Assembly: GCA_964252035.1 (NCBI GenBank)
Contig: OZ176215.1
Direction: 5' to 3' (one strand)
From: Podarcis erhardii
Taxonomy: Eukaryota
Length of the DNA stretch: 64,000 bases
Under the pieces are notes generated by a model. It was not told where the DNA came from. It made no database searches and saw only the letters and a program-made list of their open reading frames with translations. Position 1 is the first letter of the stretch. Every line of letters starts with the position of its first letter. Below are positions 6,516 to 58,201 of the stretch, one piece after another. The translations under genes and the position numbers were made by a program.

Positions 6516-6533
6516 AAGAGCTAACGTTGGAAG
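6516..6533 (+). CDS. NRXN2: Neurexin-2 alpha SS1 cassette A, 18-nt microexon, (E)ELTLE, phase 1-1
   Basis: Branch-like CTGAC at 6455, pyrimidine tract 6460-6490, TGC motifs at 6491-6502, then CACAG|AAGAGCTAACGTTGGAAG|GTGAGT. Length, phase and order match the mammalian NRXN2 EEHPME exon (recalled), but the peptide is diverged. Confidence 0.85.
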
Positions 6534-8589
6534 GTGAGTAGAGGCGCCTTTCCTTGCCATTCTGATACCTAATGCTCTGCTTGGAAAGGGATTTTGGGGT
6601 GGGGTGAGAAGGGGGATTGCTGTGTGTTGATCAGATGGTTGATGTGAGATCCAAACAGTGTTTGTTTTGCGGCATTGGGGTGGGTACTGTTTGGCAATCC
6701 TGTTAGGATCTGATCTGTGCTCCATAAAGTGTAAAGGGCAGGGCTCTCCTTGTATGGGGTTGCTGGCTGGGGGTGTAGGGGAAGAGTTACACAGACCATT
6801 TTCCTTTTGTTCCTAGTATTTGGGAGGGGAGACCTGCTCTGAGGCAGCAGAGGCTTTTTCGTAGGTTGGGGGAGGCATCTGTCTGTGTGAAGGCATTTGG
6901 CAGAGCTGGGGTAGGAGAGGTGCTTTTCTCTGAGACATCCTGAGTCTACATGGTCTCATTTGCTCTTGATATGGAAGTTCCACTTAGGCGATTTCTATCC
7001 TTGAATTTCAAACGGCAACTGTGCGCATCCCAGCTGTTCTCCTCCTTGTTGGGTGTGTGCATTCAGCTTCCAGAAACATGGTACTCCTCTACCCTTTGAT
7101 AACATTTCCAGCCCTTTCTGTTGTGTGCTAAGAAACTAAAGTGGGAGCTCTGGGAATGTCAGTCTCCAATCCCCCCACCTCTGATCTGCATTAGGTGTGC
7201 CAAAATCGGGGGGGGGGGGGTGTTGCATTGCATCATGCTAAAAGAATGATTCCCATGCCCATCTGCAACTCAGCCTGTAACTTAGTTAAAGCTGGCTGTT
7301 TTGGACCACAACTCCCAACAGCACCAAGCAGCACAGCTAGCTGTATGATGCTGGGAGCATGGCTGCGTTGTCTGCAAGGCTTGATGGGAGTTGCAGTCCA
7401 AAGCAGCTGGAATGGCAGCAGGTTGGGGGGGGGGGGAAGGTTGGCTTAAGCTCATGCAACTGAAGCACCTGGATCCATTGTTTCTCCCCCCCACCTGCCT
7501 CCTCTCCCCTCTTGTCTCCTCTTTGTCAAATTTGGGACATTGACAGGTACTCTCTGAAAACACCATGGACACTTATGATGCTCCATACAACATTTGCAAC
7601 CAGAGGCCGTGGGCTGGGCTGACAAGTGCAGAAATATGCCCTCTACTCCAGCTGGGGCAAACCCTCCTTGTGATGTTCATATTTAATTTCCAACTCCATA
7701 GAGCAGGGACAGGGGAACATCTGTGGGGCCCTCTGGGCATTGTTGGATTCCAGCTCCCACAGTCCCTAGCCAACTTAGCTGATGGCCACTGATGATGGGA
7801 TAGGTTAGTCCAATGGTATCAGGAGACCTACTGGGTTTCCCCTGTTGGAGACAGAGGTTTGGAAGAGAGATTCTTACTCTCCCATAGTAGGTTTAGCACA
7901 ATGACGATTGCTCCAAGCCCATTAAAACTTGTTTGATTTACATCTGCCCTCATCCACCTTTAAACAAATGTTCCCTACAAAAATACTTTGGCAGGAATAA
8001 GTCACAAAGACTCAGCTTTGCAAATAAATGAAGATTTTACTCACAGAGTTTCAGAAATTACAGCAGATAAGTCTCTGCTGTTGGCAGTGAAATAAAGAAT
8101 AAAAAAGTTCTCAAATGACTTTAAAAGAAAGAACTTGGTTTCCTTATAAGAGAATCACACAGTCTTTGTAAAAATCACATTTTAGAAAGATTTTCTATTC
8201 ATGTGGTTTCCTTTGCACTTGAGAGCCATGCTTGGCTGCAGTTTCTTGTAGGAAGCAGAGAAAGAGGGAGGAAGCAAATGCTGCTATAAGCCTGCTAAAT
8301 CCCATCCATGGTAACTTGAGCTCAGGACACAGGTAACTCTTTCATGCACACACGTGAGCCAGTAACTATATCACATCGCCCCCATAATCCCTGACAATCA
8401 AGAAAGTGACTGGCTCTCTTTCCTATACCAATAATTTAGGAACTTTCACAACTGTAACTTAGCCAAGTTTTACTGCCTGTGTACCTTTTTTCTGAATGCT
8501 GCCTGGGAAAGCATATGAATCTGACATTTGGAGAGTTTGTTAGTGAACCATTTTTAACTTACCAAATGTTTGGTCTCTTTCTATTATAA

Positions 8590-9037
8590 GGGAAGAGGGA
8601 AGTTTTGGAACTCACAAGGGTGACCAAGATGATCAAAGGTCTGGAAACCAAGCCTTATTAGGAATGGTTGAGGGAGTTGAGTATGTTTAGCTTGGAAAAG
8701 AGGTGACTGAGAGGAGATATGCTAGTCATCTTCAAATATCTAAAGAAAGGGCTGTCACATGAAAGATGGAGCAAGCCTGTTTTCTCCTGTTCTGGAGGGT
8801 AGAACTTGAACACACAGCTTTAAGTTGCAAGGAAGGAGATTCCAGCTAAACACCAGGAAGAACTTTTTGACAGTAAGAGCTGTTTGACAGTGGAGCAGAC
8901 GCCCACAAGAAGTTGTAGACTCTTCTTCCTTGGAGGTTTTTAAGCAGAGACTGGATGGCCATCTGTCATGGATAATTTAGTTGAGAATCCTGTATTGCAA
9001 GGGGTTAGACTAGATGAGCCTGAGGTGCCTTCCAACT
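8590..9037 (+). mobile_element. CR1 LINE 3' fragment
   Basis: ORF2 end (..GTTTAGCTTGGAAAAGAGG..CTGAGAGGAGATATG) and 3'UTR ending GACTAGATGA..CCTTCCAACT. Confidence 0.85.
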
Positions 9038-9285
9038 CCAGCATGGTGTAGTGGTTAAGAGTGGTGGACTCGTAATCTGGGGAACCGGGTTTGCTTCCCC
9101 ACTCCTCCACATGCAGCTGCTGGGTGACCTTGGACTAGTCACACTTCTCTGAAGTCTCTCAGCCTCACTCACCTCACAGAGTGTTTGTTGTGGGGGAGGA
9201 AGGGAAAGGAGATGGTTAGCCGCTTTGAGACTCCTTAGGGTAGTGATAAAGCGGGATATCAAATCCAAACTCTTCTTCTTCTTCT
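9038..9285 (+). mobile_element. Young CORE/MIR-like tRNA SINE with an L2-like end and (TTC)n tail
   Basis: GCATGGTGTAGTGGTTAAGAG A-box, GGGTGACCTTGGACTAGTCAC CORE-like block and TTCTTC tail; it abuts the 3' end of a CR1. Confidence 0.8.
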
Positions 9286-12200
9286 ACTGTTTGATGAAGG
9301 GCATATTTTAAAGATCTAACACCATATATTTCCACGCTTTCCTTTGCTGCATTTTTTGTGATTTTAAATCTCTGCTGGTGTTCTCTCACCAAAGAGTACT
9401 TGCCCCAAACCTGGATCTTGGCATCCAGGGAATTTTTCTTTTTGTGCCTGTTTTTTCCCTTGCCACCAACAAGATGCTCATGGGATCTGCACTAGCAGTG
9501 ACTAACCAGGAAAGAGACAGTGAGGTCACAGTGGATGATTTGACAAAGATGCTGACCCATCTTTGTGTGAAAAAGGAGAATTCCATGTGGAGTCAGTACT
9601 CAGCATACTCTAAATAGCAGTTGTTGGGAATCACAAGTGGCAGGAGTGTTGCTGTTGTGCTGTGCTGGGCTTTCCATTGGGGCATCCGGTTGGTCACAGT
9701 GAGAACAGGAGATTTGACGAGATGGGTCTCCTTTGGCTGGATCCAGAAGTCAGGCTGTTCTGATGCATGTTCATTTGTAGCGTTTGCCTTCCCACGAAGT
9801 TGTTGTGTTGGGCAACAGGGGACACAGGGGGTTCTGCCCCCCCAAAAAAAGTTTCACTGTGGCTTGATTCAGAGTAGACTTGCATAGACTTGCACAGCAT
9901 GTGTGGTTAATCTTAGATGTGGCATGCACCTTTTGGTTCCTATTGTATTTGCATGGTTGTCTCCAGAGTTGGGTGCTTGGAAGACATGATTTGGCCCCGT
10001 GGGGTCTCAGAGTAGGGTTCCTCAGGGTTTGATCTTATTCCCCATGCTGCCTGACATTTACATAAACCCACGGAGTGAGGAGCTCTGGAGTGTGCTGTCA
10101 TCAATATGCTGTTGACATGCAGCTCTGCTTCTCCTTTGCAGCTCAAGCAGGTGTGGCGCTGAATGTGCTTGATCAGTGCCTGGTAATGGACTGGATGTGA
10201 GCCAACAAAGTGAAGCTCAGTCCAGATAAGATGGAGGCACTCTTAGTGGGTGGCCCCTCCGCACGGATGAGTGTGATGCATCCTGCTCTGGATTCCCCTT
10301 GATGGAGCAGGTGTGCGGCACTCTCGGATCCAGCACTTTCACTGAAGGCACAAGTGGTTTCTGTGGCATGGAGGGCCTTCTGGCAGCTTCAGCTGGTAGC
10401 TCATTTGCAACCCTAGCTGGATGATAACCTTGCTTTGGTTGTCTGCACTCTGGTAGCATTCAGGTTAGATTATGGCAAGGCGTTGTTTCTGGGACTGCCC
10501 TTGAAGGTGGCTTGGAAACTTCGACAGAATGTGGTGGCTAGATTGTTAACGAGGACAAGAAGGCATGGGCTAATTTCTTTCCAGAGCCACTTAGAAGCGC
10601 TGCTCTTGACCTCCAAAGCTACCTCTTTTGTAACCCCCTGTTTGTGGGAGACTCCATGTGTGGTGCAAATGCTTTTGGGGTGATTCTTAGGGAAGGAGAT
10701 GTGTGGAAAGTCTCACCCCAAGAGTCTGGGAGATTTGATACGTTCCCGCAAAAGAGAGTTTTTGCTTGGCTGCCAGTAAATTAAATTCAATCACTGTGGG
10801 CCAAACTAAATGTGTCAGGACCACAGGGGAGCAAGTCGGGGGGGGGGGGAGATATGAATCCTTTCCACCCTATCAGGGTCCCAAAGAAAATTGCCCCCCT
10901 CCTTCTCTCCCTTCAAAGCTGCTATTTGCATCCAGTGGCACCGATGTGCAGGAAGACGTTCACATGAGCCTCAGGGCAGGAATTCCAAAAATAGCACCCA
11001 GGCTGGTTGATCCGGGCGCTGCTCACAGGGCTGCCTTCTGTTCTGAGAAATGGCACTTCCCACTTCTGACGCCCCCTATACCAAAACAGACAAATCTCCT
11101 CCGTATCTCAGTCCGCCATTATTAGCATCACCACACCACCTCCTCTCCCCTGGCCGAGAGCGGCTAGACAATCAGAAACTGATACAATGCAATCCCACGC
11201 CATAAAGAGGCTCACCGCTCTGGCTAAATGACTCCCTGAGGAGTGCAGCTGGTCATCAGATCTGGCATTTGCCACATGGATAACTGGAAGGTTCGGTGAT
11301 CACGGGAAGAAGTGAGAACCAGCAAGTCAGGTACATTGCTCAAAAATCTGCAACAGCACACAGTGCCCCCTTTGTAGAGCAGTGCCCAGAAATCCTGCAG
11401 AAGCACACAGTGCTTGCTTGGTAGTGCAATGCCCAAACTTGGGCAGGCTCTCACTGATCAAAGTGCTTGTCTGTCTGTTTCCCACCATGTCTTGGCTGTG
11501 CCAAGATTGTTCAAAAGGAAAGTTCTCAGTTGGGTTTTCTTTGCTCTGGTTCCTTTATTCTGTTCTGCCACATAATTTTTTCCTTGAAGCATGCTGGAGG
11601 GCAATTACACTTTCCTTCAGACCAGATTCTTTTTATCTGGCTGCATCACATGTGGGCAGCAGTGCTAAAGCAACGTAACTGCCACAGAGCCCACCACCTG
11701 CCAACTCCAAAAGAAGATGATGAAGACCAAGAAGATAATGATGATGATGAAGAAGCTGGGACTGTGTAGTCCCTTTTGTGAAGCTGAGATCTTAACCTAA
11801 GCCCTGCAGGGCTGAGGCTTGTTTTTCCTTGGAGGCAGAAAATGGGCCTGCTCATTTGAATGCAGCCCTTTTCTAATGTGCAAGTTGGTAGCCTTTATGC
11901 TCACTATGAGACAGATCAAGAGCCTCTTTTGCAGAAGCAATGGCACATTTGATGTAGAAGTGGTATGTTTTGGGGCAGGCGGGGGCGGGGGGACGGGACA
12001 TAAGACACAATAGACGAGCAGAGGCACAGAGGTGTCATGAAAGCCATCCCCAGGCAGATAAATGGTCTGTCTAACCCTGTTGTGCTGCAAATGTCAACCC
12101 ATTTCAGAGTGGTTGCAAATCTGTAACATAGGCATGTCCAAAGCCTGTCATGGAACAATACCAGTAACGGACTTTGGGCTTTCAAATTTCAGCAGCGCCC

Positions 12201-13178
12201 TGTGCAGTGCCATATTTTGGTACCCCCCAGCCTCTCGCCTTGCATTCTACATCACTGTTGCAGTGCCCACTGTGGCGGCTTCTCAGCTCAGTGCCCAGTG
12301 TGGGGAAACCAGTTGCACTCTCCTAAATTTGCCTCTGACAATTCCCTCTATTTCCAAAGTCCAGGTACCCAGAATGGTACCAGTGAGGCACCCAAGTGCT
12401 GGAGGAAGCCAATGGTCTGCAGAAGTATGAACAAAAAAATAGAACAAAAGACCTAAGCTGGCAGAGGTGGGGGAGGACTCTGCAGAAATAGCACAAACAG
12501 AACAGAGCATGTTCAATGGGCTCGGAATGTGTCTGGGGGACTGGGCAAGTCACCTCTACCTGCTGGAGTATCCAGCTGCTCTGTGAGTTGAAACCTTGTG
12601 TTCACTCAGGGTGGGTCCCAGCTAGTTCCATAATCCCAATGGTCAAAGTGTTTATGGGGGTTGGGGTCCCATAGGTTATCAGAAAGATGTAATAATTCCG
12701 TTTTAATGGGTTTTCCCCTCCCCAACTGTATTCTAATGTGTTTTACCAGTTGATATTTTCAGTTCATTTTATGCAATTTGATTCTAACCAACCGTGTGGC
12801 AGACGCTTCTCATGCTCTTAATCTAAACCTGTCCACAGTCCAGAAGACTGCCATCTTCATTATAGTTGAAAATGATAGTTGCTTTTTTTCACCACAGGTA
12901 GACTCATGTCATATTTCCACAAGTAATCAGTGTTGGCTTTCTGTGTTCTGCTGATGTTTCCTCCCTCTCTGTGTCATATATTGACCTCAAATTCTTCACT
13001 TGAGATGGCACGGTCAGGGGGTTCCCTCTTTTCAGAACTTTATTAACTGCTAGAACTGCCCAGTAGATTCACTGCAAATTAACTCGGAGAGAGGATAAGC
13101 TTTATAACTTGGTTGCCTTGTTGAAACTATCTGAATAAAATAATACAAACTAGAGGCTGTAACCAATTCAGTTCTACT

Positions 13179-13456
13179 CAGAGCTTTTTTTCTGGGGGGA
13201 CACAGGGTCATGCACACCCCTAAACATTTTGTGAATCTAAGCTTAGCCTCACTGGGGGCAGTATTTCAATATGAGTAGGAAAATGAGAGTACCCCCAAAC
13301 TAAGGCTACCAGACATCCCCATTTCCCGGGGACAGTCCCCGGATTTACAAATCAGTCCCCATACAAAATCCATTGAAGTTGAAAAGTGTCCCAGGATTCA
13401 TTGAAAAATATCTGGTAACCTTACCCTAAATGGTTTTTTAAAGAAAAAAAGCACTG
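13179..13456. mobile_element. Non-autonomous hAT with a nested MITE (13301-13423)
   Basis: Outer termini CAGAGCTTTTTTTCT...AGAAAAAAAGCACTG with TSD GTTCTACT. Inner termini TAAGGCTACCAGA...TCTGGTAACCTTA with 6/8 TSD CCCCAAAC/CCCTAAAT. Confidence 0.85.
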
Positions 13457-15139
13457 GTTCTACTCAAGAGTTGGGCCATTGAAATTAATGAACCAAAGTT
13501 CATCATGTCCATCAGCGTCAATGGGTCTTCTGTGAGTAGTAGATAGAATTGGCCACAATCCTAAATGCATCAACACAAGACACTGAAACCAGCCAAAGAA
13601 AAGAAATTAAAATTGTAATAGATGACCTTAAGGAGTTGCACAAGTTTGAGAAGCCTTAGCAGGTGGGGGCAAGTTAACTCCCAGAGTGGTTTAGGGTTAC
13701 TGCCTTCTAAGTGGGCTCTGGCCAAAACAAAACAAAAATCTCAAAGCCACACACACTTTCCTATCTTATGACATCTTAGGCTTCTGTTTGAACACAGAGA
13801 AGCTGGTAAAACCTTTCTGTCCCTTTCCTGTTTTCGGGCCAATCAGGTCTCTGCCCCTCTCAGCCTCTCTTAATCCAAGGCAAAGAGGCTGCCTTGAAAT
13901 GTACTCTGGGCATGCTCAGAGCTTGCTTCCTTGAAAGCCACGCCCACTCCTCCATGCACATTCTTTCTCGCTGGCCCCGGGTGGGCGTGGTTGCTGGTTT
14001 GAGCAGCTGGGGTTATTTATTTATTTATTTATTCATTCATTCATACATAGAGAGCAAGGGTGGACGCCAGTGTGTGAGTATATTTCTACAGTATCTATTT
14101 TTAACTTGATCATTTGCAGTTATTTTTGTGAACGGGGGAGGGGGGGGAATTGGGAGAATAAACAGCGGGTGGCTTCCGTATTCGTTTCAAGCTTCAACAC
14201 TTGTGTATTATTGGAACTGTAGGATATGTGTGTCTATGTTTGAGAGCAGGAGGGAGGTTTTGCCTTCCTGATTTTTTGTTTAGGTTTAAAAATACTGTAG
14301 GTGTCTTTGGTTGTTTTTCGAAGAACAGGATGCTGGCCTAGACGGGCCTTCAGCCTGATCCAGCAGGCCCCACTCTGGGGGTTATAAGATTCAGTATGCT
14401 GTTTATACAAAGAAAAAGTCAGACACTTCTCAGTGTACAGTAGTTGCATACTCTTCATAAAATTGCAGTGCTTAAGTGTCCACAGAAGCTTTGCAAGGGA
14501 GGGAGATGGGGAGAAAACTAGAACAACTTAGCTGCCCCCTGGCCCATGACCACTCATTGGCCTCGCAGCCCCATTGCTTTTAAGGGAATCCCCCATTGGG
14601 GCTCAAGGTGGTTGGCTGCTTAGCATCTAAGTGACCTTCTTGGTATACTCAAAAGTAAAATAAATCTTATCGAAATAAAGAGTTTGCAAGGCAGAGCTCT
14701 GGCAAAGAGATGTTATTTATCCTTTCAAACATCAAAGTTCTGTTTTTTAGAGGGAAGACACACATTATATAAATATGGGGCTATTCCATCTTGAGTATTG
14801 GATGATTCTGTAAAGAGTCCTTTTTGAAATGTGAAGGGATTCTTCTCTTTGGGGACCACCTCTGAGAAAAGCCAGAGTTATCCACACAGAGAGTGAGTTC
14901 CCAGAGGACTAAATCTGCTGGGATATTCCAGCTGTTCTCTCCAAAGTCTATCATAGGTCCCGTTTCAGGTTAGGCTAAGGTTCAGATGCTTCTGGTTGCT
15001 ATACTTACTGGATTTCTTACTTGACCACCCCCATGAGGTGGCAACAGGGCAGGTTACATTGATTTGAAAATATGTTATTAAAATCAGTTAAAACAAACTA
15101 CAGTCAAGAGAAAAGGGTAGGTCCAAAGCACACAAACAC

Positions 15140-15357
15140 GTATATTATTATTAATTGCATTTATATCCCATCCCTTTTCTCCAAGGAGCTCAAGGTGGTG
15201 GGCATGGTTCTTTCCCTCCTAATTTAATCCCACAACAACCCTGGGAGGTAGGTTAGGCTGCAAAGGCAGGGTTACCCAGTGAGCTTCATGGCCGAGTGGG
15301 GATTTGAACCCGTCTCCCAAGTCCTAGTCCAACACTCTAACCACTACACCACACTAC
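15140..15357 (-). mobile_element. Older CORE/MIR-like SINE
   Basis: The reverse strand reads GTGTGGTGTAGTGGTTAGAGTGTTGGACTAGGAC..GGTTCAAATCCCCACTCGGCCATGAAGCTCACTGGGTAACC. Confidence 0.75.
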
Positions 15358-16225
15358 CTCTCAGATATATACTGTCCAAGGCCATGGAGCCCTTGGAGGA
15401 GAAGCTATTGATGTATTATGCCTACTTCTTCCACATTTTTGAACTAAAAGCACTCTTGTTTAGATTATCAACACTAGAGAATAAACTCCTAGTTTTGGTA
15501 GCTGCCCTCGCAAAGGCATCCATCAAGTCAATCATCCAGTGTTCAGTATCAAGAGGTAGGTCAATCTCTGTTAGGGTAGTAATAGACTTGGGGGATACCC
15601 AATGATTCTGTATCCAGGGAACTTCCACCTACTTTGTTAATACGAAAACAGCCAAGCCCTGAGGAATGGCAGATCTTCAGATAGCTAAGCTCCTAATGAA
15701 CTAGGCTCTCCTGGATCACTTCCTTGTCAAGAACAGAAATGATGAATAGAGTTAAAGTAGAAATGCCCATTCTGGATCAGGTGTGTAGAGTCCCCTTTTA
15801 TAGTGACTGATGCTGAGCAGGTGTAAGCAGAAATAAGCTAAAGAACAGAACTGAAGAATTGCGAGGAGTCGAGTGGGGCCATTGCTCATAGCATGGATGG
15901 GTTGGAACGGATGCCTTTGGGGGTGGATGAGTTTTCCTTATCACAGGGGAGGTTAAGTGAGGATAAGATTAAGAGCCTGCGTCATGGAGCAGAGCTGGGT
16001 GGATGAAGTGATAGGGGAAGTTCCTAAGGGAGTTTGAACTGATCCTATTGCAAGAAACTTGGGCTCTAGATAATATTGATTTTCCTGGATATATTACTTT
16101 TTGTTGGTGCCAGCAGCATCAAGGAAAAACAAGAGACCCCAGTGGTGGATTAGACTTACTAAGTTTCAACATCAATAAGGGCAAAAATATTGCACGTTTG
16201 GAAAGTGGATAGCAATATGTCCCTT

Positions 16226-16376
16226 GGACAGTTAAGGCCGCATTTATTTAGAGTATGGTGGTGATAATGCCAAGGTTGCCGGTTTGATCCCCATATGGGA
16301 CAGCTGCATATTCCTGCATTGCAGAGGGTTGGATTAGATGATCCTCAGGGTCCCTTCCAACTCTATGATTCTATGA
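16226..16376 (+). mobile_element. Short SINE with a tRNA-Ile-like head and CR1 3' tail
   Basis: ..GGTGATAATGCCAAGGTTGCCGGTTTGATCCCCATATGG resembles the vertebrate tRNA-Ile 3' half, followed directly by CCTGCATTGCAGAGGGTTGGATTAGATGATC..CCCTTCCAACTCTATGATTCTATG. Confidence 0.8.
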
Positions 16377-16628
16377 AATTACAGTTTTATTGTACCTCCG
16401 ACTTCATCACTCTCCGTTGACCACAAGGCCCAAAGTTGAGATTTTTGATTTTTTGGGGGGGATCAGTTGGGTCCAGTGTTAGCTGCAGGAGATTCCCATG
16501 CAAGAATTGGGAGGGAAAGAGAGGGAGGGACCCTCTCAGTGAGGGGCAGAATATTTGCTGGAACTTGAGATGCCGGTGAAGCTCTGATGGGTTTATAAAG
16601 TAAAGCAAATTTTTACATATTGTAACTA

Positions 16629-16649
<21 letters not shown>

Positions 16650-16663
<14 letters not shown>

Positions 16664-17005
16664 AGTAATAATTCATTATTTATACCCCGCCCATCTGGCT
16701 GGGTTTCCCCAGCCATGCTGGGTGGCTTCCAACAGAATATTAAAATACAATAGTCTATTAAACATTAAAAGCTTCCCTAACTAGGGCTGCCTTCAGATGT
16801 CTTCTAAAAGTCTGGTAGTTGTTTTTTCTCTTTGACATCTGGTAGGAGGGCGTTACACAGGGTGGGTGCCACAACAGAGAAGGCCCTCTGCCTGGTTCCC
16901 TGTAACTTGGCTTCTTGTAGCAAGGGAACCGCCAGAAGGCCCTCGGCACTGGACCTCCGTGTCTGGGCAGAACGATGGGAGTGGAAACGCTCCTTCAGAT
17001 ATAGT
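16650..17005 (-). mobile_element. L2 3' fragment
   Basis: The reverse complement matches the 3' part of the 46669 L2 (TFRRHLKAALVREAFNV). Confidence 0.85.
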
Positions 17006-17789: not shown

Positions 17790-17859
17790 CTTTATATTAA
17801 CCTGTTGTATGAGGGGGGGATGGGGAGGGGAGATTTTGCTTTTTAAATTTATTTTTACC

Positions 17860-23665: not shown

Positions 23666-23704
<39 letters not shown>

Positions 23705-24872: not shown

Positions 24873-24874
<2 letters not shown>

Positions 24875-24905
<31 letters not shown>

Positions 24906-43102: not shown

Positions 43103-43133
<31 letters not shown>

Positions 43134-47470: not shown

Positions 47471-48730
47471 TTGATAGATACACATACATATATACATGCA
47501 CGCGCGCACACACACACACACACACTGAGGCTGCCAGAAAACATACCACTGAAACTTGGTGCAGAATCCTAAGTCTGAAGATGGGATGATGTGTAAGGCC
47601 TCACTGGTCATCTTGGTGCTACCAGGTCAAAGGTGCAAGGTCAAAGGCCTCTGCCACAAGTAGGATACCACCAGGTGCCATGCCCATCCATATATTGGCT
47701 TAATGTGGATGGTGCCCCCCTAGTGCCCCTTTTAATTCCCCCTCATCCGCGTGGTGTTCTGCTCCGGCTACTGCCGCCCCACATATTTTCCTCCCTAAAG
47801 CTGGAGGTTGCCTTTGCTCTGAAAATCCAAATTGGAGAGCTACATCAATTGCATAGGGCACTGTTTTCCAAAGTGTATGTTTCAAAGGCTACACGGCATT
47901 TAAAAAATATATATTTTACTTCATCATACTTATATTTACCTGCAGAAAACAATTCAAAGATAAAACAGTATTATTAAAACTACCCCCAAATTATCTTTTA
48001 CCGAGAAGGGGGATGTTGGTAAGACTAAAGGTGTACGTGATTATTGTAAGTTTGGGAAACAATGGCACAGGGACTCTCCAGAATTAGGGGAGAGAAAGTG
48101 TGGGACAGCAGCAGTTGGAGGGGAACCCCACACAGACATGGAGGAATTAAGGGGCTCACCATCCACATTGAGCCAAGTTATGGATAGCATCCTTTATGCA
48201 GGAAGTCAGCCCTATTGGAGGAAATACAGTATTTCTCTGGATAATAACCAGGTGTGGTTTTGGGTGACTCTCCAGGACAGGGGAGGAGAACACCCTTGGT
48301 CAGGTGTTGTTCTGGCTCCAGCTATTCTCAACCCCAGCCTGCATAGCCAGGGAGCTATAAATGAAGGATATCTGTGGGATCCTGAAGGATGGGGTCTCAG
48401 GAGTGAGCTGCCACCCTGGCACATGTAACTTAGCAGATGGTTGCAATTGTTTTAGATGGATTAACTTTAGTTTTATGTTCGAATGTTTCCTTGTTTGTTT
48501 TCCAAATATGTCAGTGGCCCTGGGATATCTCTCGTGATGGAAATCTCATAAATAGGGTCCTCTTTTGTTGTGTAACAAAGCCAGAGGCTCCCCTCTATAA
48601 CTGTCCTGGCGTTCCAGGGGCACCAGCTGCAGGAGGGCTTGGGGGTTCCTCTGCTGGTGGGCCTTCCCTGGGCAGCAGCGTCAAGCAGCCAAGGAGCCAC
48701 CATTTTAAGTTTTCCTTCATGCCCCAGTGT

Positions 48731-50119
48731 TTTTTTTTTTATATATAAGATATTTATTGAAATTTTCCAGAATAATACATTATAAAACAACAAAAAAGAA
48801 ACAACAAAAATACAAAAAAGAAAAAATATAAAAACAACTAAAAAACACATAAAATTTCCCTTTACCTATTTTCTTTTAACTTATTTTCCGGACCTCCTCA
48901 TACCTCCCTTTCTTATATTCCAATTCAAATTATAAATTCAGCAAATCCTCACCATTAGTTTTTACTTAATTCAAAACCTTATTTTCCATATCTCTTAAAG
49001 CATTACAGCTGGAAACCACTTAATTTCTGTCCAACATCATTCATTAATTTTACAATATTTCTGCAAATAATCTTTAAACTTCTTCCAATCTTCTTCCGCC
49101 GACTCTTTTCCCTGGTCTCGGATTCTGCCAGTCATTTCTGCCAATCCCATATAGTCCATCATCTTCATCTGCCATTCTTCCAGAGTGGGTAGATCTTCTT
49201 GTTGTGACGTGGGGTTTGTGATTTCAGCTCCCTTGACATAATATGCTGGAGACGGTTCTCTAGTAACACTTCTTTATTAAAGCAACAAGACTGAGACTTG
49301 AGGAGGGGAGAGCTACATTTATAGGGACAGGGAACTAGCTAGAAAGGATACATTTTGGAGGGAACAATATCAGGCAATCACAGTCCTGCCTTTTGGAGGA
49401 AACCAATAAGACAGAGGATCCAAATACAGCAGCTTAAATGAACCAATAGTAGCTGTACCCTCTGGAACCAAAAGGCAGTTACTTTACCCTAATGCAAATA
49501 CAGACAATAATAATACAGATATAAAATCCTTTGACTCAATACACAACACTTGTGTCTTCCAATATTTTGCGATGAGTATTCTTGCTGCTGTTGTCGCATA
49601 CATAAAAAAAGTTCTATCCTTCTTTGGCACCAATTGGCCAACCATGCCCAGGAGAAAGGCCTCTGGTTTCTTCAAGAAGGTATATTTAAATACCTTTTTC
49701 ATTTCATTATAAATCATTTCCCAGAAAGCCTTAATCCTTGGGCACATCCACCAAAGGTGAAAGAATGTACCTTCAGTCTCTTTACACTTCCAACATTTGT
49801 TATCGGGCAAGTGATAAATTTTTGCAAGCTTGACTGGGGTCATGTACCACCTGTAAATCATTTTCATAATATTCTCTCTTAAGGCATTACATGCCGTAAA
49901 TTTCATACCGGTGGTCCATAACTGTTCCCAGTCAGCAAACATAATATTATGTCCAACATCCTGTGCCCATTTAATCATAGCAGACTTCACCGTTTCATCC
50001 TGAGTGTTCCATTTCAGCAGCAAGTTATACATCTTTGACAAAACCTTAGTTTTGGGTTCTAACAATTCTGTTTCTAATTTCGATTTTTCCACCTGGAATC
50101 CAATTTTCTTGTCCAGCTC
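48731..50119 (-). mobile_element. Young 5'-truncated L1 of the same family, interrupted by a solo LTR
   Basis: The translated region differs from the 37921 copy at only a handful of about 190 residues. Poly-T at 48731 and a 13-bp TSD CATGCCCCAGTGT at 48718-48730 and 50120-50132. Confidence 0.95.
49200..49548 (-). mobile_element. Solo LTR inserted into the L1
   Basis: TGTTGTG...CACAACA inverted termini and a 5-bp TSD CTTCT/CTTGT (1 mismatch) that restores the L1 sequence AGATCTTGTGTC. TATAAAT and AATAAA lie on the minus strand. Confidence 0.85.
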
Positions 50120-51767
50120 CATGCCCCAGTGTTGCTCAAGGGCATTATGGGAAATTTAAAATGGCAGCTGCCCAAACTTGTCCAACCAGCATTGCAGGGG
50201 AGGCCCAGGGCAAGAGGCTGTCCTGCAGGAGCCCTGCTAGGGGGCTGGGGCTCCAGCAGGCCCCTACCTCACCCCACAAGGATCCTCAAAATTCTAGGCC
50301 CCTGGAGTTGGATATTCTTTTGCTAGGGGTGCTTGTTCCCTCTTTGACCTTGGAAGCGACAGTAAACTAGGTTCAGAGCTGTAGGGTTGGCATGAAGAGA
50401 GGGGGAAAGAGCCACTTCCATGTACAGGGTGTCAGGGTCACATGCGCCACCAGGAGTTTAAAACACTATGATACCGCTTTAAATAGTAATGGCTTCTTCC
50501 CCCAAAGAATCATGGGAACTGTAGTTTGTTATGAGCGCTGATAATTGTTAGGAGTCCCCCTTCATTTCCCTCACAGAGCTCCAATTCCCAGAGTGGTTTA
50601 ACCGTCAATCCCTCTTCACAGGGAACTCTGGGAAACAACAACAACTCTCAGGATTCTTTGCAGGAAGATATTATTCATTTCCCCCCCATTGCATTTATAT
50701 ACTGCCTTCAAAGCCACACAATATGGTTTACAATTTTAAAGTACCACAGCAAATGATAAATAACATTTAAAATGGAGAAGGAGGGACAGTCTGACTGGAG
50801 CAGGTCCTGGTTTTGTCGGGGATGCTCTTCACAATCGATACTAATGATTGGTGTTTAGGGTTTAATTCGGTATTAATAATGATAATAGTAATAATTAGAA
50901 ACAGACAGTGTATTTAAAAACGCAAACAACAACACAGCCGATGAAAAGTTCCCAAAGAAGAAGAGCAGGGCCAATAATAATAATAAAAAAGTGAAACACC
51001 AGATCAGGTAGTTAGCCAGACCTTCAGAACTATGTATTTATTTTTGCTGGTTTTGAAACATCACCAGAATGGAAGCCAAATGAATTTCCTGGGGCAGGGA
51101 ATTTGCGAGCTGTTCCTGGATTGCTGAGGGCGCATGTGTCACTATGTTCTTCCACTCCAGGGATGGGCCATATGACTCAGCAGCCCTTGGGCCCAATTCA
51201 GAAAATCCCCTGTAAGCCATGAGTTCATACATCTGGCGAGATCGATCTGTTCCTCTTCCTGCAGTTTGCTGAACTGGGGGAGGGATGGCAGAAAAGGAGG
51301 GCTTCAGCCCTACCTACTGCTGCCAAAAGGCCATCAACAGACTGTTCTGGAGGGGATGTGGCTCTCAAGAGAAAAAAAATTGTCCATCCCTGCTCTTTTA
51401 CTGTCTGGATAGCTCAGGTTGTCATCAAGGGCAGCCCCGTGAATGCTTGTTTTGAAGCAGTCTAACTTGAAGGTTGTGAAGGAAGGAATGGTGGTTGCTG
51501 GTTTCACAAAGAAAGAGTAGCAGCCACCCTCCTCCAAATTTATTTGAATGCATTTGTGCCCCACTCCCCCAGAGCTCAATGTGACCTTTGTGGCCAACTG
51601 AGATTTTGAATCCAGGTATCCCAAGCCCAGCCCATTCTCCACAATGATAGACAGGTGTCAGGAGCCGTTGAAAAGCATTTCAGTATTCTAGCCCCAGTGC
51701 TAGATGCAGCAGGTTAGGGATGGAGCTCCATGGCAGGTCACCTTCCTGGTATGTAGAAGAGCACACT

Positions 51768-51904
51768 TATAGAATCATAGAATTAGAAGGGGGCACAAGG
51801 GTCATTTAGTCCAACCCCCTGCAAGGTGGGACTCCTTTGCCCAATGTGAGGCTTGAACCCACAACCCAGACATTAAGAGACTCTACCAACTGATCTATCC
51901 CAGC
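51768..51904 (-). mobile_element. Short SINE with a tRNA-Lys(CTT)-like head and CR1 3' tail
   Basis: The reverse strand reads GGGATAGATCAGTTGGTAGAG..TCTCTTAAT..GGGTTGTGGGTTCAAGCCTCACATTGGGC, then TTGCAGGGGGTTGGACTAAATGACC..ATTCTATGATTCTAT. A related fragment lies at 53088-53180. Confidence 0.75.
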
Positions 51905-52605
51905 TGTCAAAACTCCATGGAGTGAAACATAACATTCACCAACATGGATGCCCCCAGAGTGTACTATCCTCTCATTACAGAGCTGTGCTACTGATCTTTT
52001 AAACACCTCTTTCAGACATTTTGTTAAGGATTTGCCTCAGACAGGAGAACCCAGATATATTGATGTTGTGGTCTAATGTTGGGTGGTTTTGGCTAATCTG
52101 CCTTTCAGAATGATTGTTTGCATTTCTGCCATTGTTTGTGTTTAGTTCTGATTGGTGTTGTTGCTTGTATCATCAGGGTGTAGGTGGGCTACCACATTGT
52201 CAAAGGCGGCCATCATGGCCAATGGTCAGGGATGCTGGGACTTGTGGTTCAGCAATAGCCAGAGAGCCACCTTTCCCCTTTGGGGAAACCCAAAGGCAGC
52301 GTATCAGTGCTTTAGCAAGAAAACCCACTGATCATAGAATTGTAGAATTGGAAGGGAGACCAAAGAGTCATTCAGTCCAACCCCCTGCAGTGCAGGAATC
52401 ACATGCTCCTCCCTTGCTGTCTGTTCCTGCCAGCCCAGAGCAGGGACTGGGCCAGTGATCCTCCTGCTACCCCAGCAAGGGAACAGCTCAGCTATCCTGA
52501 GGCCTGGCTGGGGGAAGGGCCGTAGCTCAGAGGTAGAGTATCCGCTTTGCATGTGGAAGGTCCCACGTTGAATCCCTGCTGGCATCTCTCAAGTAGGACT
52601 GGCAG

Positions 52606-52880
52606 AGAATCATAGAGTTGGAAGGATCATGTAGTCCAGCGGTTCTCAACCTGTGGGTCCCCGGGTGTTGTTGGACTACAACTCCCATCATCCCTAGCTA
52701 GCAAGGCCAGAGCTCAGGGATGATGGGAGTTGTAATCCAACAACAACTAGAGACCCACAAGTTGAGAACCGATGAATTCTAGTCCAATCCTCTTCAATGC
52801 AAGAATATGCAGCTGTCCCATATGGGGATCGAACCCACAACCTTGGCATTATCAGCACCATGCTCTAACCAGCTGCACTA
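52606..52880 (-). mobile_element. Second tRNA-Ile/CR1 SINE, carrying a MITE
   Basis: The reverse strand reads GCTGGTTAGAGCATGGTGCTGATAATGCCAAGGTTGTGGGTTCGATCCCCATATGGGACAGCTGCATATTC, then a CR1 tail split by the MITE at 52637-52774. Confidence 0.82.
52637..52774. mobile_element. 138-bp palindromic hAT MITE with SPIN-like terminus
   Basis: Begins CAGCGGTTCTCAACCTGTGGGTC and has the same loop as the 44225 copy. TSD is imperfect (ATGTAGTC / AA-TTCTAGTC). Confidence 0.88.
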
Positions 52881-52890
52881 TCCACTTGGG

Positions 52891-53026
52891 CAGGCATAGG
52901 CAAACTTGGCCCTCCAGATGTTTTGGGACTACAACTCCCATGATCCCTAGCTAACAGGACCAGTGGTCAGGGATGATGGGAATTGTAGTCCCAAAACATC
53001 TGGAGGGCTGAGTTTGCCTATGCCTG
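52891..53026. mobile_element. 136-bp palindromic hAT MITE
   Basis: CAGGCATAGGCAAACT TIR and perfect TSD CACTTGGG. Confidence 0.92.
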
Positions 53027-53624
53027 CACTTGGGGATAAAGAGATCTGCATTTGAAGCCATGTTTCAGCTATCCAAGGTCACTCTAGTATCATAGAATTG
53101 TAAGGTACCACAAGGGTCATCTAGTCCCTGCAATGCAGGCATTGTTTGCCGAACATGGGGCTCAAACTCACGACCCAGTCCTGCTTGAAACGCTGGAGAG
53201 CTGCCGCCAGCCAGTGTAGACAATATTGAGCTAGAGGGACCTCATGGTCTGATTCAGCATAAGGCGGCTTTCTATGTTCCTTTGTAAGGCTTGGTGAGGC
53301 ACCTGCCTCCCGCTCTGAGCTCCGACACCTTAAGATGTGCAGGCTGAGAGTTTCTATGGCAGCCCCTGCGAGCCCTGCCTTTTGCTGGAGCCCAGCAGGT
53401 CTGGATCCAGAGAACATCATAGTGCTTGGTTCCTCCTCCCAGGTAGGGAGAGGCGGCCTCTGCCTGCCAAGGAAGCACAGTGTGTCCATTGCTCCTTTGA
53501 CAGAGGTACAGCATCGCCAGGGGGTCCTATGAGGAACCACTGACATCCCATGACATTACGGTCTCCAGGGGGGCATTAACTTCCACTCCCTGTCCCTTTG
53601 GGGGGCAAATTGTCACTTGCATAC

Positions 53625-54085
53625 AACACCCTGCTTGTGAAATTTGCACTGGCTGCCAATCTGCTGCAGGGCCAAGTTCAAGGGGTTGGTAGTAACACAA
53701 TACAGCTTAGGACCAGGTTACTGGAAGTTCCACCTTTTCCCTTATACACGCAGTGAGTCATTGCCTTCTGCTGGAGAGCTTCTCCTTCAAATCCCCAGAA
53801 TATCGGAAGCCCATTCCCCAGTGACTTGGAGCAGGGCTTTTAGTGTGGCTGCCCCTGTTCTGGGTAAGAGCATCCCTGCTGAGATACGACAGGCGCCCAC
53901 AACCTGCACTTTCCAGAAACAATTGAAAATGTTTTTGTTCCAACAAGCTTTCAAAGCTGGATGGCGATGGTCTCTGCCAAGGGTTTCTACTTTGCCTGCT
54001 GTTTACCTGCTGTTATTTTCTGTGTTTTTAACTTATTTTGTACATTGCTTTGAGAATGTGTGGCAGGTGATTAAATAATAAAGAA
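53625..54085 (+). mobile_element. Older L2 3' fragment
   Basis: Translates to HWLPICCRAKFK..RAFSVAAPVL..FQKQLKMFLF. Similar older pieces lie near 3760-4010, 10440-10700 and 29790-30110. Confidence 0.8.
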
Positions 54086-56520
54086 ATACTTGCATTCTCC
54101 ATCCCTTTCTAGAGATGTGAAGGCCCTGAATTTTTATTTTTTTTGGGGGGGGGGATGTTTTTCTCCATCCTCCCCACCAAAAAGCATTTTGTTTGCTTTT
54201 TCCTGAAAAACTGGGGGATGGGGGGATGGATGGTAAAATATTTTCTTTTAGAATGATGAACAAAACCTTTAAGATGAGGTGTTTGTATATTTAGTCCCCC
54301 AAAATGATTTCTAAAATTGTTTTAACGGGAAGACTTTCATGTAATTCATGTGCACTGAGGTCATGCAAGCTTGTAGCTGAGGATTCAGCTCCCAAATGCA
54401 AGCTGCATTTCTGCCTCTTGACCATTGTCGCAAGGGGAGCAAGAAGGACCCAGTGCCTTCTCTGCTTTTGGCCTTCCTCTTGTAAACATGGTTGGTGGAT
54501 CTCTTTCTGCCCTCTTGACTAGGCCTCAAATGTCTGAGGGTGGCAGAAAGGCACAGAGCAACACAATTGTGTTGCCATCCAATTCACGCTGTTGCAGATT
54601 CTGTTGGGCCCAAGATTCAAAGGCAAGGATTGTCCGTGATGATAGCACTGACCCAATAACAAAACAAGCAGCACACTTTGGGCTTGATGTTGGACAGATA
54701 CATTCCAGTGTTGCAGAGAGCAGAATATCTTCAGGCTGATGAAGGCAGTCTGGGATTCAGCCAAACATATCCCTCTTGCAACATGAGGGCAAAGCCTTTC
54801 CACAACAACACAGCCTCTGTCTCCTTTTGCTTCTTACCTACTTCAGATTCCTCCATCTTTTGCGTCATGTTGAAAGAAACTGGTCCAAGTTTGGAAATAT
54901 AACAAATCAAGTAAATTATAATTTACTCGCCCTTCACCCTAATGTTCCAGAGCTGGTTACAACTATTAAAACACAACGATGAAAAAGTTGAAAACAAACG
55001 TACAATCGCAGGAATAAATAAGCTGGCATGCGAAAGGATAGAAGCTTGTTTCAGTCTGGGCAAACCTTCAGTTTTGAGAAGTCCATGGAGAATGTGATGG
55101 TGACAAATATGAAGTAACTGAAACAGAGAGTGAGTGATAGCTAAGAGAAAGAGACTGAATAAATTTCCTGTAGAGTTCACAGAATTTTGTTCCCTCTCCT
55201 CTCTTTTTTCCAGCTCTATTTATTTATTTACTTATTTGTTAACTTTCCATACTACCCTTCATCCGAGAACCACAGGGTGGTTTACAATATAATAACACAA
55301 AAATACATATCATAGTACCAAACAAAACAATAGCCCCCAGTTTAAAACACCATAAATTGTGGGGAAACGAGAGTGCTTTATGTCTACTTGACACTGTGGA
55401 GGACTTGAAGGAAACAATAATTCTCAGAATATTCAATAGTTTGTTTTACTAGAATGTGAGAATGTGGACAGATTCTGCTTTTACTGTTTTTTTGCTGGCT
55501 CCTCATAAACTGGCAAAACCAAAGAGATGCCAAAGAAGTTCCTTTGTGGTACAGCAGCTTGTTGCTCCATTTACAACAAAAACTTACAAATTCAGTTTGT
55601 AATTATTGTCTGTAGAAACTGTATAGTACTTTTGATAAACCAAACACGATACTTATTTGGTAAACCAAATTATGCACAATATGGTTTATGTGAACGAAGT
55701 GACTGTTGATATTTAGAGAATGCTAGAAAATGGTACTGAATATTATTATGTATTGTTTTTTAATTCCCCAAATCCCAGGCGTCCCCCCCTGAAAACGCCG
55801 GGTGGGGAAACAACAGTCCTTCCCCTCTCCCCATGGCTTCAAACATTTGGGAGATTTTAAATCTCTATCCCTTTGGTTACATATATTATAAATAATTATA
55901 ATAACTATTGTAGCTTGTTGTTTGTAGAAGGGGGGAGGGCGAAGCCAACTTGCAGTACCAGATGCCACTACAGCTTACCTGAGTGGGGCAGGGCAGTGGC
56001 ACATTTGGGGTGGTGTCGGGGGCCTGGCAGAGCCAATCTGGTGCCCCTGCCTCGCTGCCTCAGCTTCACCCAGGTAAGCCGGTAGTGCCAGTGTTGAGAG
56101 GGCGGCTCTGTGGCTCCACTACACAGGCCGCTCTGAGATTGTCACCGGCCACCCCAATCTCTGCCGAGCAGTGTGCCAAGATTCCAGGGGTTTGTGTTCC
56201 TTTAGGGTTACCAGCTGCCCTGTATAATACAAGATTGCCCCGTATTTCAATATAAAACGCTATGTCCCATATTGATAACAGTTTTGTCCTCTTATTTCAG
56301 ATCTTTTTCTCTTTCTCTTTCTCTGCCAAGTTAGGGATCCTGTCCAAATGCATGTGTGTGAAAGGGCATGTATTTAAGCTCTGGGTAGCCAAGCACAGAC
56401 AGATTTGCAAACTCTTGTGTATGTCTGCATGCACATGCATGTGTGACAAATTCCAGAGGGGCCATCCTGTCAGGCTGCAGTAGATTGTAATGGATTGCTT
56501 TGAAGTCACTTCAGTACCGG

Positions 56521-56563
<43 letters not shown>

Positions 56564-58132
56564 TTGTCCACCAACCGCCCAGCCCCATCCTGTATTTTGC
56601 CAGTGCCAAGGTGGCAACCCTAGGCATAGTGGAGTCTGTGGTTTATTTGCACATATTTACACCTGAGTTTTGGTGGAGGGATTGCAGAATATTACAGCCC
56701 AGGAGCATCTCTTGTTGGTCTCCTGATAGCTTCAGCAAACTTGGGTCCAGAGCAGAAGCCAGCCATGTTCCCTGGTCTCTGTGTGCAGCCTCTCCCAGCC
56801 AGCCCAGCCTCTCCCTGCCCCCATTTTCAAACCTCTCTTTAAAAACACCACAGCTTTCCTTCGGTTTACATCACCACCCACTGTCCACTTGGAACTCCCC
56901 GCTCCCAGCTTACACTGAAATCCTATACCTCGTCTTTGTCTCTGTTCACCATCCCCTCATGGGAGGAAGGGCTCACACTCCTCTGTTGCCTGGCACAGGG
57001 TAACTGCCCGTGTCGGTCGACCATTCCCTTCCTTTGAACTACATTATGGTTCTTCTTCCCAGGCGATTCCTGCCCAGGAAACTGATTCAGCCTGCATTTT
57101 TACACTGCTGAGCTGTCTCACACCCAGGTGAAGCCTTTCAGGCATTTAGTAATTGCCTACATTCACTAACTCTAGAAATTATTGGGTGGCGGCGGGGGGG
57201 AAGGAACCTGGTACCCAGTACTTTAAGGGATGCCTGCACGCATCCCAGATCATATCACTATTTATAGCTGGCCAGCATTGAGCCAGCATTTTCTATAGCT
57301 ACAGTTAGCACAAACTGGTTTGCAACCCTGGTCCTAAACGGGTTTGCAAAGGGTGAGTTGGGCAAACTGTAGTCAGCACGACTTAACAATAACCAGAATT
57401 AGCTCTGAAATGGAGGGCAGGGCGGGGAAGCAAGGTCTCAGGTGGCTCCCCCAGTAGAGCCAGTTTGACCTCTGGGCACATATAAGCATATTGATTGTGT
57501 TTATTTGTATGGCCCCTTTCCAGGGTGCGTGTGCTGTGCCCAAAGTGACTTGTGGCAAGCATTCATATTCTCAAAATACAAAGTGTGTGTGTGAGTGGTG
57601 GTGGTGGTGGTGGGGAGAAGTCACAGAATCATAGAACTGTAGAGTTGGAAGGGACCCTCAAGGATCATCTAGCCCAGACAACCTCCGTTGAAAAGCCTCC
57701 ACTACCTCCTATTCACCACTGAGCGGCTCTTACCACTAGGAAGTTCTTAACTGCTGCCGAAATAATAGAATAAAGAGTTGGGTGTGACCTTGGAGGTCAT
57801 TTGGTTCAGCTGCTTGGTCAATGTAGAGTCTACTGTGCAGGATGTCAGCACAGCATCCCTGACAGGTGGCTGCCTCTTCTTAAATGCTGTTCCTGCTCCT
57901 ACAACTAAGCCATTTGAAACATTTGGAAAGGGGGGGAGGAGTGAGTGTGTGTTTACCTGCAACCATCTTATCCCAGAAGTCTAATTTTGGAACGGATCAT
58001 TCTTCTGTTGCACTCTGGGAGGTTCAGCCGGTCATTGGTGTCCAGGCACGTGTGGGGCTGATGCGCTGTGCCTGGGGTGGGTCGGGGGGCTTCTGGCCTA
58101 TCTTCCCTAATGCTGTGGTTCTGCTTCTCCAG

Positions 58133-58201
58133 TAGGGTCCCTACTGTACTCGGAAGGGGGGGCTGGGAGAGGAGCCAGTGAGGTGCACCAGACATCAAAA
58201 G
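58133..58201 (+). CDS. NRXN2: Neurexin-2 alpha SS1 cassette C, 69-nt exon, (V)GSLLYSEGGAGRGASEVHQTSK, phase 1-1
   Basis: Branch-like CCCTAAT, then CTGCTTCTCCAG|TAGGGTCCC...TCAAAAG|GTCAGT. Clear match to human VGSLLFSEGGAGRGGAGDVHQPTK (recalled), one residue shorter. Confidence 0.96.

What the first reader, a model, noticed from the sequence alone, without database searches (positions are those of the whole stretch)
6516..58201. Hidden gene: three NRXN2 SS1 cassette exons (117 coding nt in total) invisible to ORF calling
Seen: three exons with canonical splice signals, lengths divisible by 3, all phase 1-1, in the correct order. Known: neurexin alpha SS1 is a multi-cassette linker between EGF1 and LNS2. 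Inference: the whole window is NRXN2 intron and these short exons could be missed by automated annotation in squamates.
Basis: partly seen in the sequence, partly recalled or inferred. Interest (0 to 1): 0.7.

Follow-up and report, generated by a model that had tools for sequence, protein, structure and literature searches.

The report
Lizard neurexin-2 SS1 mini-exons

Summary
Together they make 117 nt.

Their translations line up, in order, with the human neurexin-2-alpha SS1 insert printed in PMC13728146 (E244-K283, 40 aa):
- B matches 8 of 9 residues.
- C matches 17 of 23, with one residue missing.
- Both junction codons between the exons (Gly, Val) are reproduced.
- A matches only 3 of 6, so it rests mainly on its splice signals, its length and its junction codons.

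Splice scores sit in the top 0.1-5% of all AG/GT sites in the window. The assembly gap (46426-46668) lies in a LINE-like repeat inside intron B-C and touches no exon.

RNA evidence is weak. Twelve small, probably transcriptome, contig runs hold only the share of words that exon C alone would give. One laid run matches the exon only. Two raw RNA runs of unknown tissue showed no reads. The flanking EGF and LNS2 exons lie outside the window.

Verdict: lizard orthologues of known NRXN2 SS1 cassette exons. This is not a hidden gene. Whether annotation misses them was not testable.

The parts
6516..6533 (+). SS1 exon A, 18 nt, phase 1-1. It encodes (E)ELTLE plus the first base of a Gly codon.
   Evidence: The acceptor is ccccacag and the donor gtgagt (99.9th percentile). 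It has the same length and the same E-E...E-G frame as human EEHPME-G. It ties for second of 138 18-nt candidates by similarity to the human residues (EHPME). The top-ranked candidate has weak sites and wrong junction codons; the other tied candidate (29438) was not checked further. Three UGC motifs lie within 40 nt upstream. It lies in DNA with no other copy in the window. This is the weakest of the three exons.
42968..42997 (+). SS1 exon B, 30 nt, phase 1-1. It encodes (G)PAHLTLNSQ.
   Evidence: It matches human PAHLTLNSE at 8 of 9 residues. The acceptor is at the 99.8th percentile, with a tract of 93% C/T over the 40 nt upstream, and the donor gtatgg is at the 99.0th. No other copy in the window apart from a ~30-nt low-complexity match in its downstream flank.
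58133..58201 (+). SS1 exon C, 69 nt, phase 1-1. It encodes (V)GSLLYSEGGAGRGASEVHQTSK plus the first base of a Gly codon.
   Evidence: It matches human GSLLFSEGGAGRGGAGDVHQPTK at 17 of 23 residues, with one residue missing. Acceptor and donor are at the 95.8 and 99.1 percentiles. Run X3 has contig depth only over the exon bins, with none in the flanks. Twelve small contig runs hold 3 of 22 sampled words, about what the exon alone predicts.
6534..42967 (+). Intron A-B (36.4 kb).
   Evidence: No neurexin-like coding segment was found. It contains repeats and the + strand LINE fragment at 37888-39648.
42998..58132 (+). Intron B-C (15.1 kb). It contains the assembly gap 46426-46668 and a - strand LINE fragment.
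6476..6515 (+). Upstream 40 nt of exon A, with three UGC motifs. This is an SRRM4-type microexon enhancer look-alike, by inference only.
   Evidence: only 4.8% of AG sites in the window have 3 or more TGC in the 40 nt upstream. The motif's role is as described in PMC12221596.

Best explanation
The window is intronic DNA of the alpha-neurexin-2 gene (NRXN2) of a lacertid-like lizard. It carries the three consecutive small exons that encode the optional 'splice site 1' (SS1) insert in the linker between the first EGF-like domain and the LNS2 domain.

Each exon is a multiple of three, starts after the first base of a codon and ends in G. Any subset of A, B and C can therefore be spliced in or out without breaking the frame. 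The junction codon is set by the first two bases of whichever exon follows: AA gives Glu, GT gives Gly, TA gives Val.

What is shown: sequence, phase, order and homology to the human insert. What is inferred: that the exons are used as independent cassettes in neurons, as in mammals. It is also inferred that inclusion is helped by microexon-type signals, namely UGC motifs upstream of A and C and a long C/U tract upstream of B.
For: Exon borders, lengths and phase come.

The human NRXN2-alpha SS1 insert E244-K283 is printed in PMC13728146. A by-eye alignment, exon by exon, gives these identities: A 3/6, junction G, B 8/9, junction V, C 17/23. The total is 39 aa against 40 aa.

The words AHL[TM][LM], GSLL[FY]S and SEGGAG occur on the + strand only at B and C; the only other hit in the six frames is one chance AHL[TM][LM] match on the - strand at 58695.

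Splice scores are in the top 0.1-5% of the window, and almost no other candidate reaches that stringency on either strand. The exons lie in DNA with no other copy in the window, not in repeats.

Sequencing runs give limited support. Twelve small 'RNA?' contig runs from five organism labels and six studies hold 3 of 22 sampled words. Exon C alone predicts 3.6, while whole-genome-like runs hold all 22. In run X3 the laid contig covers exon C plus or minus 1-5 nt, or a part of it, and nothing in the flanks.

An NRXN1 intron was noted on another piece of this genome. That fits with this locus being a different paralogue.
Against: - No junction read was seen. Two raw RNA-seq runs of a related or the same species (tissue unknown, about 12% of reads sampled) gave zero depth on exon C.
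- One contig of run X1 crosses the acceptor of C unspliced.
- The small runs are only guessed to be RNA.
- Exon A shares just the acidic ends with the human sequence.
- The flanking EGF and LNS2 exons are not in the window.
- No database protein could be retrieved for a formal alignment.
- The human comparison is one peptide from one paper, aligned by eye.
Confidence: 0.88

Rival explanations
1. Exons B and C are genuine, but the 18-nt segment at 6516-6533 is a chance AG..GT site. On this reading the real first SS1 exon lies elsewhere, perhaps upstream of the window, or is absent in lizards.
For: Only 3 of 6 residues match human EEHPME. Another 18-nt candidate at 15528 scores higher by BLOSUM (NHPVF). 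There is no RNA evidence for A.
Against: The donor gtgagt is at the 99.9th percentile and the acceptor at the 94.7th. The length is exactly 18 nt. The junction codons give Glu before it and Gly after it, as in human. Three UGC motifs lie upstream. The 15528 rival has weak sites and would give Val and Ser at the junctions. At matched stringency no other 18-nt candidate exists on the + strand.
Confidence: 0.15
2. The three segments are relics: sequences inherited from the ancestral SS1 exons that this lineage no longer splices into mRNA.
For: Two raw RNA runs show no reads on C, and one contig is unspliced across the acceptor.
Against: All three frames are open and all six splice sites are strong. 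Identity to human is high in B and C after more than 300 My (age from general knowledge), which implies purifying selection. Contig runs hold exon C without its flanks. The tissue of the raw runs is unknown, and NRXN2 is brain-enriched (general knowledge).
Confidence: 0.05
3. The locus belongs to another neurexin paralogue (NRXN1 or NRXN3), not NRXN2.
For: All alpha-neurexins have a multi-exon SS1, and an AHL motif is shared with NRXN1 (recalled from memory, not tested).
Against: Exon B matches the published NRXN2 insert at 8 of 9 residues. Exon C matches a 23-residue stretch that, to my knowledge, is specific to NRXN2. An NRXN1 intron lies on another piece of this genome.
Confidence: 0.03
4. 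The whole pattern is chance: random AG..GT pairs in a long intron.
For: Each short length class offers over a hundred open AG..GT candidates (129 for 30 nt across the region between A and C; 138 for 18 nt upstream of B).
Against: An exact 8-residue match and a 12+4-residue match to a 40-aa peptide occur on one strand, in order, each bounded exactly by strong splice sites in the right phase. By rough estimate, the expected number of chance 8-mer matches in 128,000 six-frame positions is about 1e-5.
Confidence: 0.01

Closest known systems
Human and mouse NRXN2-alpha splice site 1 (SS1) insert, E244-K283 of UniProt Q9P2S2, as used in PMC13728146
   Same: The position is inferred to be the same, between EGF-A and LNS2. 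The order of the three sequence blocks is the same, as are the Gly and Val junction residues. Exon B is nearly identical, and the core of exon C (GSLL.SEGGAGRG...VHQ..K) is shared. The phase-1 frame is consistent with the insert starting at Glu and being followed by Gly.
   Different: The lizard insert is 39 aa rather than 40 aa, with one residue fewer in the Gly/Ala-rich middle of C. Exon A is diverged (ELTLE against EHPME). There are a few substitutions: F>Y, E>Q and PT>TS. The introns are long, 36 and 15 kb, and loaded with LINE and SINE copies.
SS1 mini-exon clusters of NRXN1-alpha and NRXN3-alpha (Ullrich 1995; Tabuchi & Sudhof 2002; Treutlein 2014, cited through PMC12665717)
   Same: They share the architecture: several tiny in-frame cassette exons in the EGF-A/LNS2 linker that can combine freely.
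   Different: The sequences differ. From memory, NRXN1 has additional upstream exons. A short-motif scan for three words recalled from memory of those exons found none upstream of exon A; the only hits were two chance LQCV 4-mers elsewhere in the window, in the wrong place.
Vertebrate neural microexons dependent on SRRM4/nSR100
   Same: Exon A (18 nt) and, at the borderline, exon B (30 nt) are in the size class. UGC motifs lie just upstream of the 3' splice sites of A and C, and that motif's role is described in PMC12221596. The gene is synaptic.
   Different: Exon C (69 nt) is too long for the class. SRRM4 dependence of NRXN2 SS1 was neither found in the papers searched nor tested.

Membership tests
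NRXN2-alpha SS1 cassette exons | The encoded peptide is homologous to the published NRXN2 SS1 insert. | tested here: met
   Exon B matches 8/9 and exon C 17/23, and the junction G and V match the human insert in PMC13728146. Exon A matches only 3/6. The alignment was made by eye, exon by exon.
NRXN2-alpha SS1 cassette exons | The exons are collinear on one strand, in the order of the protein. | tested here: met
   A 6516 < B 42968 < C 58133, all on the + strand.
NRXN2-alpha SS1 cassette exons | The exons are frame-neutral (a multiple of 3, same phase at both ends) with canonical splice sites. | tested here: met
   Lengths are 18, 30 and 69 nt, all phase 1-1 with AG/GT borders. Site scores are in the top 0.1-5% of the window.
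NRXN2-alpha SS1 cassette exons | The exons are flanked by the LNS1/EGF-A exon upstream and the LNS2 exon (GKEEFVATF) downstream. | not testable with these tools
   Neither is inside the 64-kb window (motif scan).
NRXN2-alpha SS1 cassette exons | The exons are spliced into brain mRNA. | tested here: inconclusive
   Twelve small contig runs hold exon C words only, and the X3 contig is confined to the exon. However, no junction was displayed, the raw RNA runs had zero depth, and the runs are only guessed to be RNA.
NRXN2-alpha SS1 cassette exons | Use is alternative (inclusion and skipping both occur). | not tested
SRRM4-type neural microexon | Length of about 3-27 (up to 30) nt. | tested here: met
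   Met for A only: A 18 nt is in the class, B 30 nt is borderline, and C 69 nt is outside it.
SRRM4-type neural microexon | A UGC motif lies close upstream of the 3' splice site. | tested here: met
   A has 3 and C has 2 within 40 nt upstream. B has none, but its upstream tract is 93% C/T. Background is 0.85 per 40 nt, and 4.8% of AG sites have 3 or more.
SRRM4-type neural microexon | Inclusion depends on SRRM3/4. | not testable with these tools
   This needs knock-down or expression data.

The most novel reading that the evidence does not exclude
In this lizard lineage SS1 splicing could be rewired by young transposons. Exon B sits between two inverted LINE copies that are 97% complementary over 567 nt and about 10 kb apart. 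These could pair in the pre-mRNA and loop the exon out. A further 30-nt phase-1-1 segment with a top-percentile acceptor (45748-45777, FELEEQARE) lies between B and C and could be a lineage-specific extra cassette.
Probability: 0.07. Interest if true: 0.4.

Novelty: already known. Interest (0 to 1): 0.15.

Why it matters
The value is mainly for annotation. The report gives exact coordinates and phases for three neurexin-2 mini-exons that ORF-based or homology-poor gene callers cannot see. It also shows that the NRXN2 SS1 insert is conserved from mammals to lizards in both exon structure and sequence, except for the diverged first exon. It opens no new biological question. SS1 is a long-known splice site whose function is still poorly defined; in PMC13728146, removing it did not markedly change Vstm2 binding.

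Tried and rejected
1. The 30-nt candidate at 45748-45777 (FELEEQARE) was considered as the middle exon. It was rejected because 42968-42997 matches the published insert at 8 of 9 residues.

2. PDB sequence searches with exon C and with the stop-free stretch through B found nothing.

3. Pfam on the three stop-free stretches gave nothing relevant, only a sub-threshold chance hit.

4. The search for homologous proteins was run with the stop-free stretch through exon C (82 aa, region 1-40) and came back blank. Only 45-143-aa proteins were eligible, so this says nothing about full-length neurexins.

5. Read laying was placed on 57568-58767 and was swamped by a SINE-like repeat, so the exon C loose ends were not among the rows shown. 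That single call is spent.

6. The PNAS paper with the mouse exon map (Treutlein 2014) is not held.

7. A motif scan for the flanking EGF/LNS2 exons and for NRXN1-type extra SS1 exons found none in the window. The LQCV hits are chance and in the wrong place.

8. The Rfam scan of the window found nothing.

10. Not done: a scripted alignment with the 40-aa human peptide. It has no reference id, so it was aligned by eye.

11. Not done: the large representative-protein search.
Full report
**What is there**

Reading the two ends of the finding shows two segments with textbook borders. The first is ccccacag|AAGAGCTAACGTTGGAAG|gtgagt at 6516-6533 (18 nt). The second is cttctccag|TAGGG...CATCAAAAG|gtcagt at 58133-58201 (69 nt).

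A scan of all 30-nt AG..GT segments open in phase 1 gave 129 candidates. Two had near-perfect polypyrimidine tracts: 42968-42997 (xPAHLTLNSQx) and 45748-45777 (xFELEEQAREx).

**Identity**

A full-text search for a short peptide word found one paper. PMC13728146 (Nat Commun 2026) prints in its Methods the human NRXN2-alpha SS1 insert, residues E244-K283 of UniProt Q9P2S2: EEHPMEGPAHLTLNSEVGSLLFSEGGAGRGGAGDVHQPTK.

I compared it with the window exon by exon, by eye:

| Part | Window | Human | Identity |
|---|---|---|---|
| Exon A | (E)ELTLE | EEHPME | 3/6 |
| Junction codon G\|GT | Gly | Gly | match |
| Exon B | PAHLTLNSQ | PAHLTLNSE | 8/9 |
| Junction codon G\|TA | Val | Val | match |
| Exon C | GSLLYSEGGAGRG-ASEVHQTSK | GSLLFSEGGAGRGGAGDVHQPTK | 17/23, one residue fewer |

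This settles the middle exon as 42968-42997 and rejects 45748. On the + strand the diagnostic words occur only at these places. The only other hit in the six frames is one chance AHL[TM][LM] match on the - strand at 58695.

The 40-aa human peptide has no reference id, so I did not script an alignment with it.

**More than chance**

With a simple log-odds score, the acceptor and donor sites rank among all 4,578 AG and 3,591 GT sites of the + strand as follows:

| Exon | Acceptor percentile | Donor percentile |
|---|---|---|
| A | 94.7 | 99.9 |
| B | 99.8 | 99.0 |
| C | 95.8 | 99.1 |

I then applied the weakest of these values as thresholds, which is a post hoc choice. Only six phase-1-1, stop-free segments of 9-99 nt remain on the + strand. 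They are the three exons, two alternative-acceptor versions of B and C, and one 9-nt site. One segment remains on the - strand.

The exons lie in DNA with no other copy in the window, not in repeats.

Exon A is the weak link. By similarity to the human residues it ties for second of 138 18-nt candidates. The higher-scoring candidate at 15528 has poor sites and would give the wrong junction residues. The other tied candidate (29438) was not checked further. A keeps the human length, the Glu-Glu start, the Glu-Gly end and a consensus GTGAGT donor.

**The assembly gap**

The gap at 46426-46668 is the only run of N in the window. It lies in intron B-C, 3.4 kb past B's donor and 11.5 kb before C's acceptor. 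Its right flank reads as the C-terminal part of a LINE reverse transcriptase, which is a typical cause of assembly gaps.

No exon touches it, and the coding frame runs through splice junctions rather than through the gap. The human-like order A-B-C on one strand argues that the scaffold is collinear across it. A misjoin, or a further tiny exon inside the gap, cannot be excluded.

**Surroundings**

The rest of the window looks like intron. The only Pfam hit among ORFs of 150 aa or more is a reverse-transcriptase fragment. The longer ORFs are LINE ORF2 pieces or low-complexity runs. Rfam finds nothing.

The flanking neurexin exons (EGF-A upstream, LNS2 'GKEEFVATF' downstream) are not inside the window. 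Earlier notes of the scan cover no neighbouring window. One note places an NRXN1 intron on another piece of this genome. Another calls the genome wall-lizard-like.

**RNA evidence**

The look-up of sequencing runs was run on 58033-58301.
- Six large runs hold all or nearly all (0.91-1.00) of the 22 sampled words. These are whole-genome-like.
- Twelve small runs (65-125 Mb of contigs) from five organism labels and six studies each hold 0.14 of the words, which is 3 words. Their kind is only guessed to be RNA.
- Exon C alone holds 39 of the 239 possible words, so 3.6 sampled words are expected.

My single read-laying run was poorly placed. A very abundant SINE-like repeat at 58445-58740, together with a second highly covered stretch at 57608-57687, filled the tables, so any loose ends at exon C were not among the rows shown. 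What can be read from it:
- In run X3 the only depth between 57888 and 58407 is in the two bins over exon C. The bin means fit a single piece spanning exon C plus or minus 1-5 nt, or a 35-39-nt piece inside it. Nothing lies in the flanks. A spliced transcript contig would look like this, but so would a very short DNA contig.
- Run X1 has a 96-nt contig (58065-58160, no differences) that crosses the acceptor unspliced. It could be pre-mRNA or DNA.
- Two raw RNA-seq runs (organism B, tissue unknown, about 12% of reads read) have zero depth on exon C.

RNA use is therefore suggested, not shown.

**Database searches exon by exon**

The PDB held nothing for exon C or for the stop-free stretch through B, and Pfam held nothing relevant.

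The word-indexed protein search with the 82-aa stop-free stretch through C was blank. Its length filter admitted only proteins of 45-143 aa, so this says nothing about full-length neurexins.

I did not run the large representative search. The operators flagged its cost, and the paper had already settled the identity. It could have helped only for exon A.

**How it most likely works**

All three exons are frame-neutral and end in G. The first two bases of the following exon decide the junction residue: AA gives Glu, GT gives Gly, TA gives Val. By inference, GN of the LNS2 exon gives Gly.

Any of the eight combinations therefore keeps the frame. That is the design of the multi-cassette SS1 of alpha-neurexins described for mammals (Ullrich 1995; Tabuchi & Sudhof 2002; Treutlein 2014, as cited in PMC12665717). 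The insert lengthens the linker between EGF-A and LNS2.

Its ligand role is poorly defined. In PMC13728146, removing SS1 did not markedly change Vstm2 binding.

On regulation, I can offer inference only:
- Exon A has three UGC motifs in the 40 nt before its acceptor, and exon C has two. The background is 0.85 per 40 nt, and 4.8% of AG sites have three or more.
- UGC between the polypyrimidine tract and the 3' splice site is the SRRM4 microexon signal (PMC12221596).
- Exon B is preceded by a tract that is 93% C/T and rich in UCUU, the PTBP1 motif type listed in the same paper.
- No paper linking NRXN2 SS1 to SRRM4 was found.

**Comparison and novelty**

These are the lizard orthologues of a splice site known since the 1990s. 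The differences from human are small. One residue fewer lies in the Gly/Ala-rich middle of C, exon A is diverged, and the introns are long and transposon-rich.

'Hidden gene' overstates it. This is a known part of a known gene, trivially invisible to ORF calling because the exons are 18-69 nt. Whether squamate annotations miss them could not be tested here.

Interest is low. The result is a clean confirmation with exact coordinates.

Noticed in passing
window 37888-39892 (+) and 48799-50122 (-): Two LINE (L1-like, RT-bearing) fragments lie in inverted orientation around exon B. The arms 38921-39487 and 49549-50115 are 97% complementary over 567 nt and 10 kb apart. They could pair in the pre-mRNA. 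This is the subject of another first-stage note (s1-268930).
   Followed up: partly
window 45748-45777 (+): A 30-nt phase-1-1 open segment (xFELEEQAREx) has the best acceptor score in the window (100th percentile) and a fair donor (95.5th percentile). It lies in DNA with no other copy in the window, between exons B and C. It has no homology to the human insert. It may be a decoy site or a lineage-specific cassette.
   Followed up: partly
window 58130-58135 (+): Exon C has a tandem NAGNAG acceptor (cag|TAG). Use of the distal AG (exon start 58136) would drop only the junction Val.
   Followed up: no
window 42971-42973 (+): An internal CAG sits 6 nt into exon B and gives a weaker alternative acceptor (exon start 42974). 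Its use would turn G-P-A into A.
   Followed up: no
window 58445-58740; copies at 32821-33064 and 31659-31937: A SINE-like repeat starts 244 nt downstream of exon C's donor. It is extremely abundant in all four laid runs, with contig depth sums up to about 266,000 and many variant positions. A second highly covered stretch lies at 57608-57687.
   Followed up: partly
window 46426-46954: The assembly gap sits inside a LINE-like element. The right flank translates to a reverse-transcriptase C-terminal-like peptide (...[15 protein letters not shown]...).
   Followed up: no
window 167-230 and 35718-35861: A (GT)32 microsatellite, and a 72-nt unit repeated twice at 98% identity.
   Followed up: no
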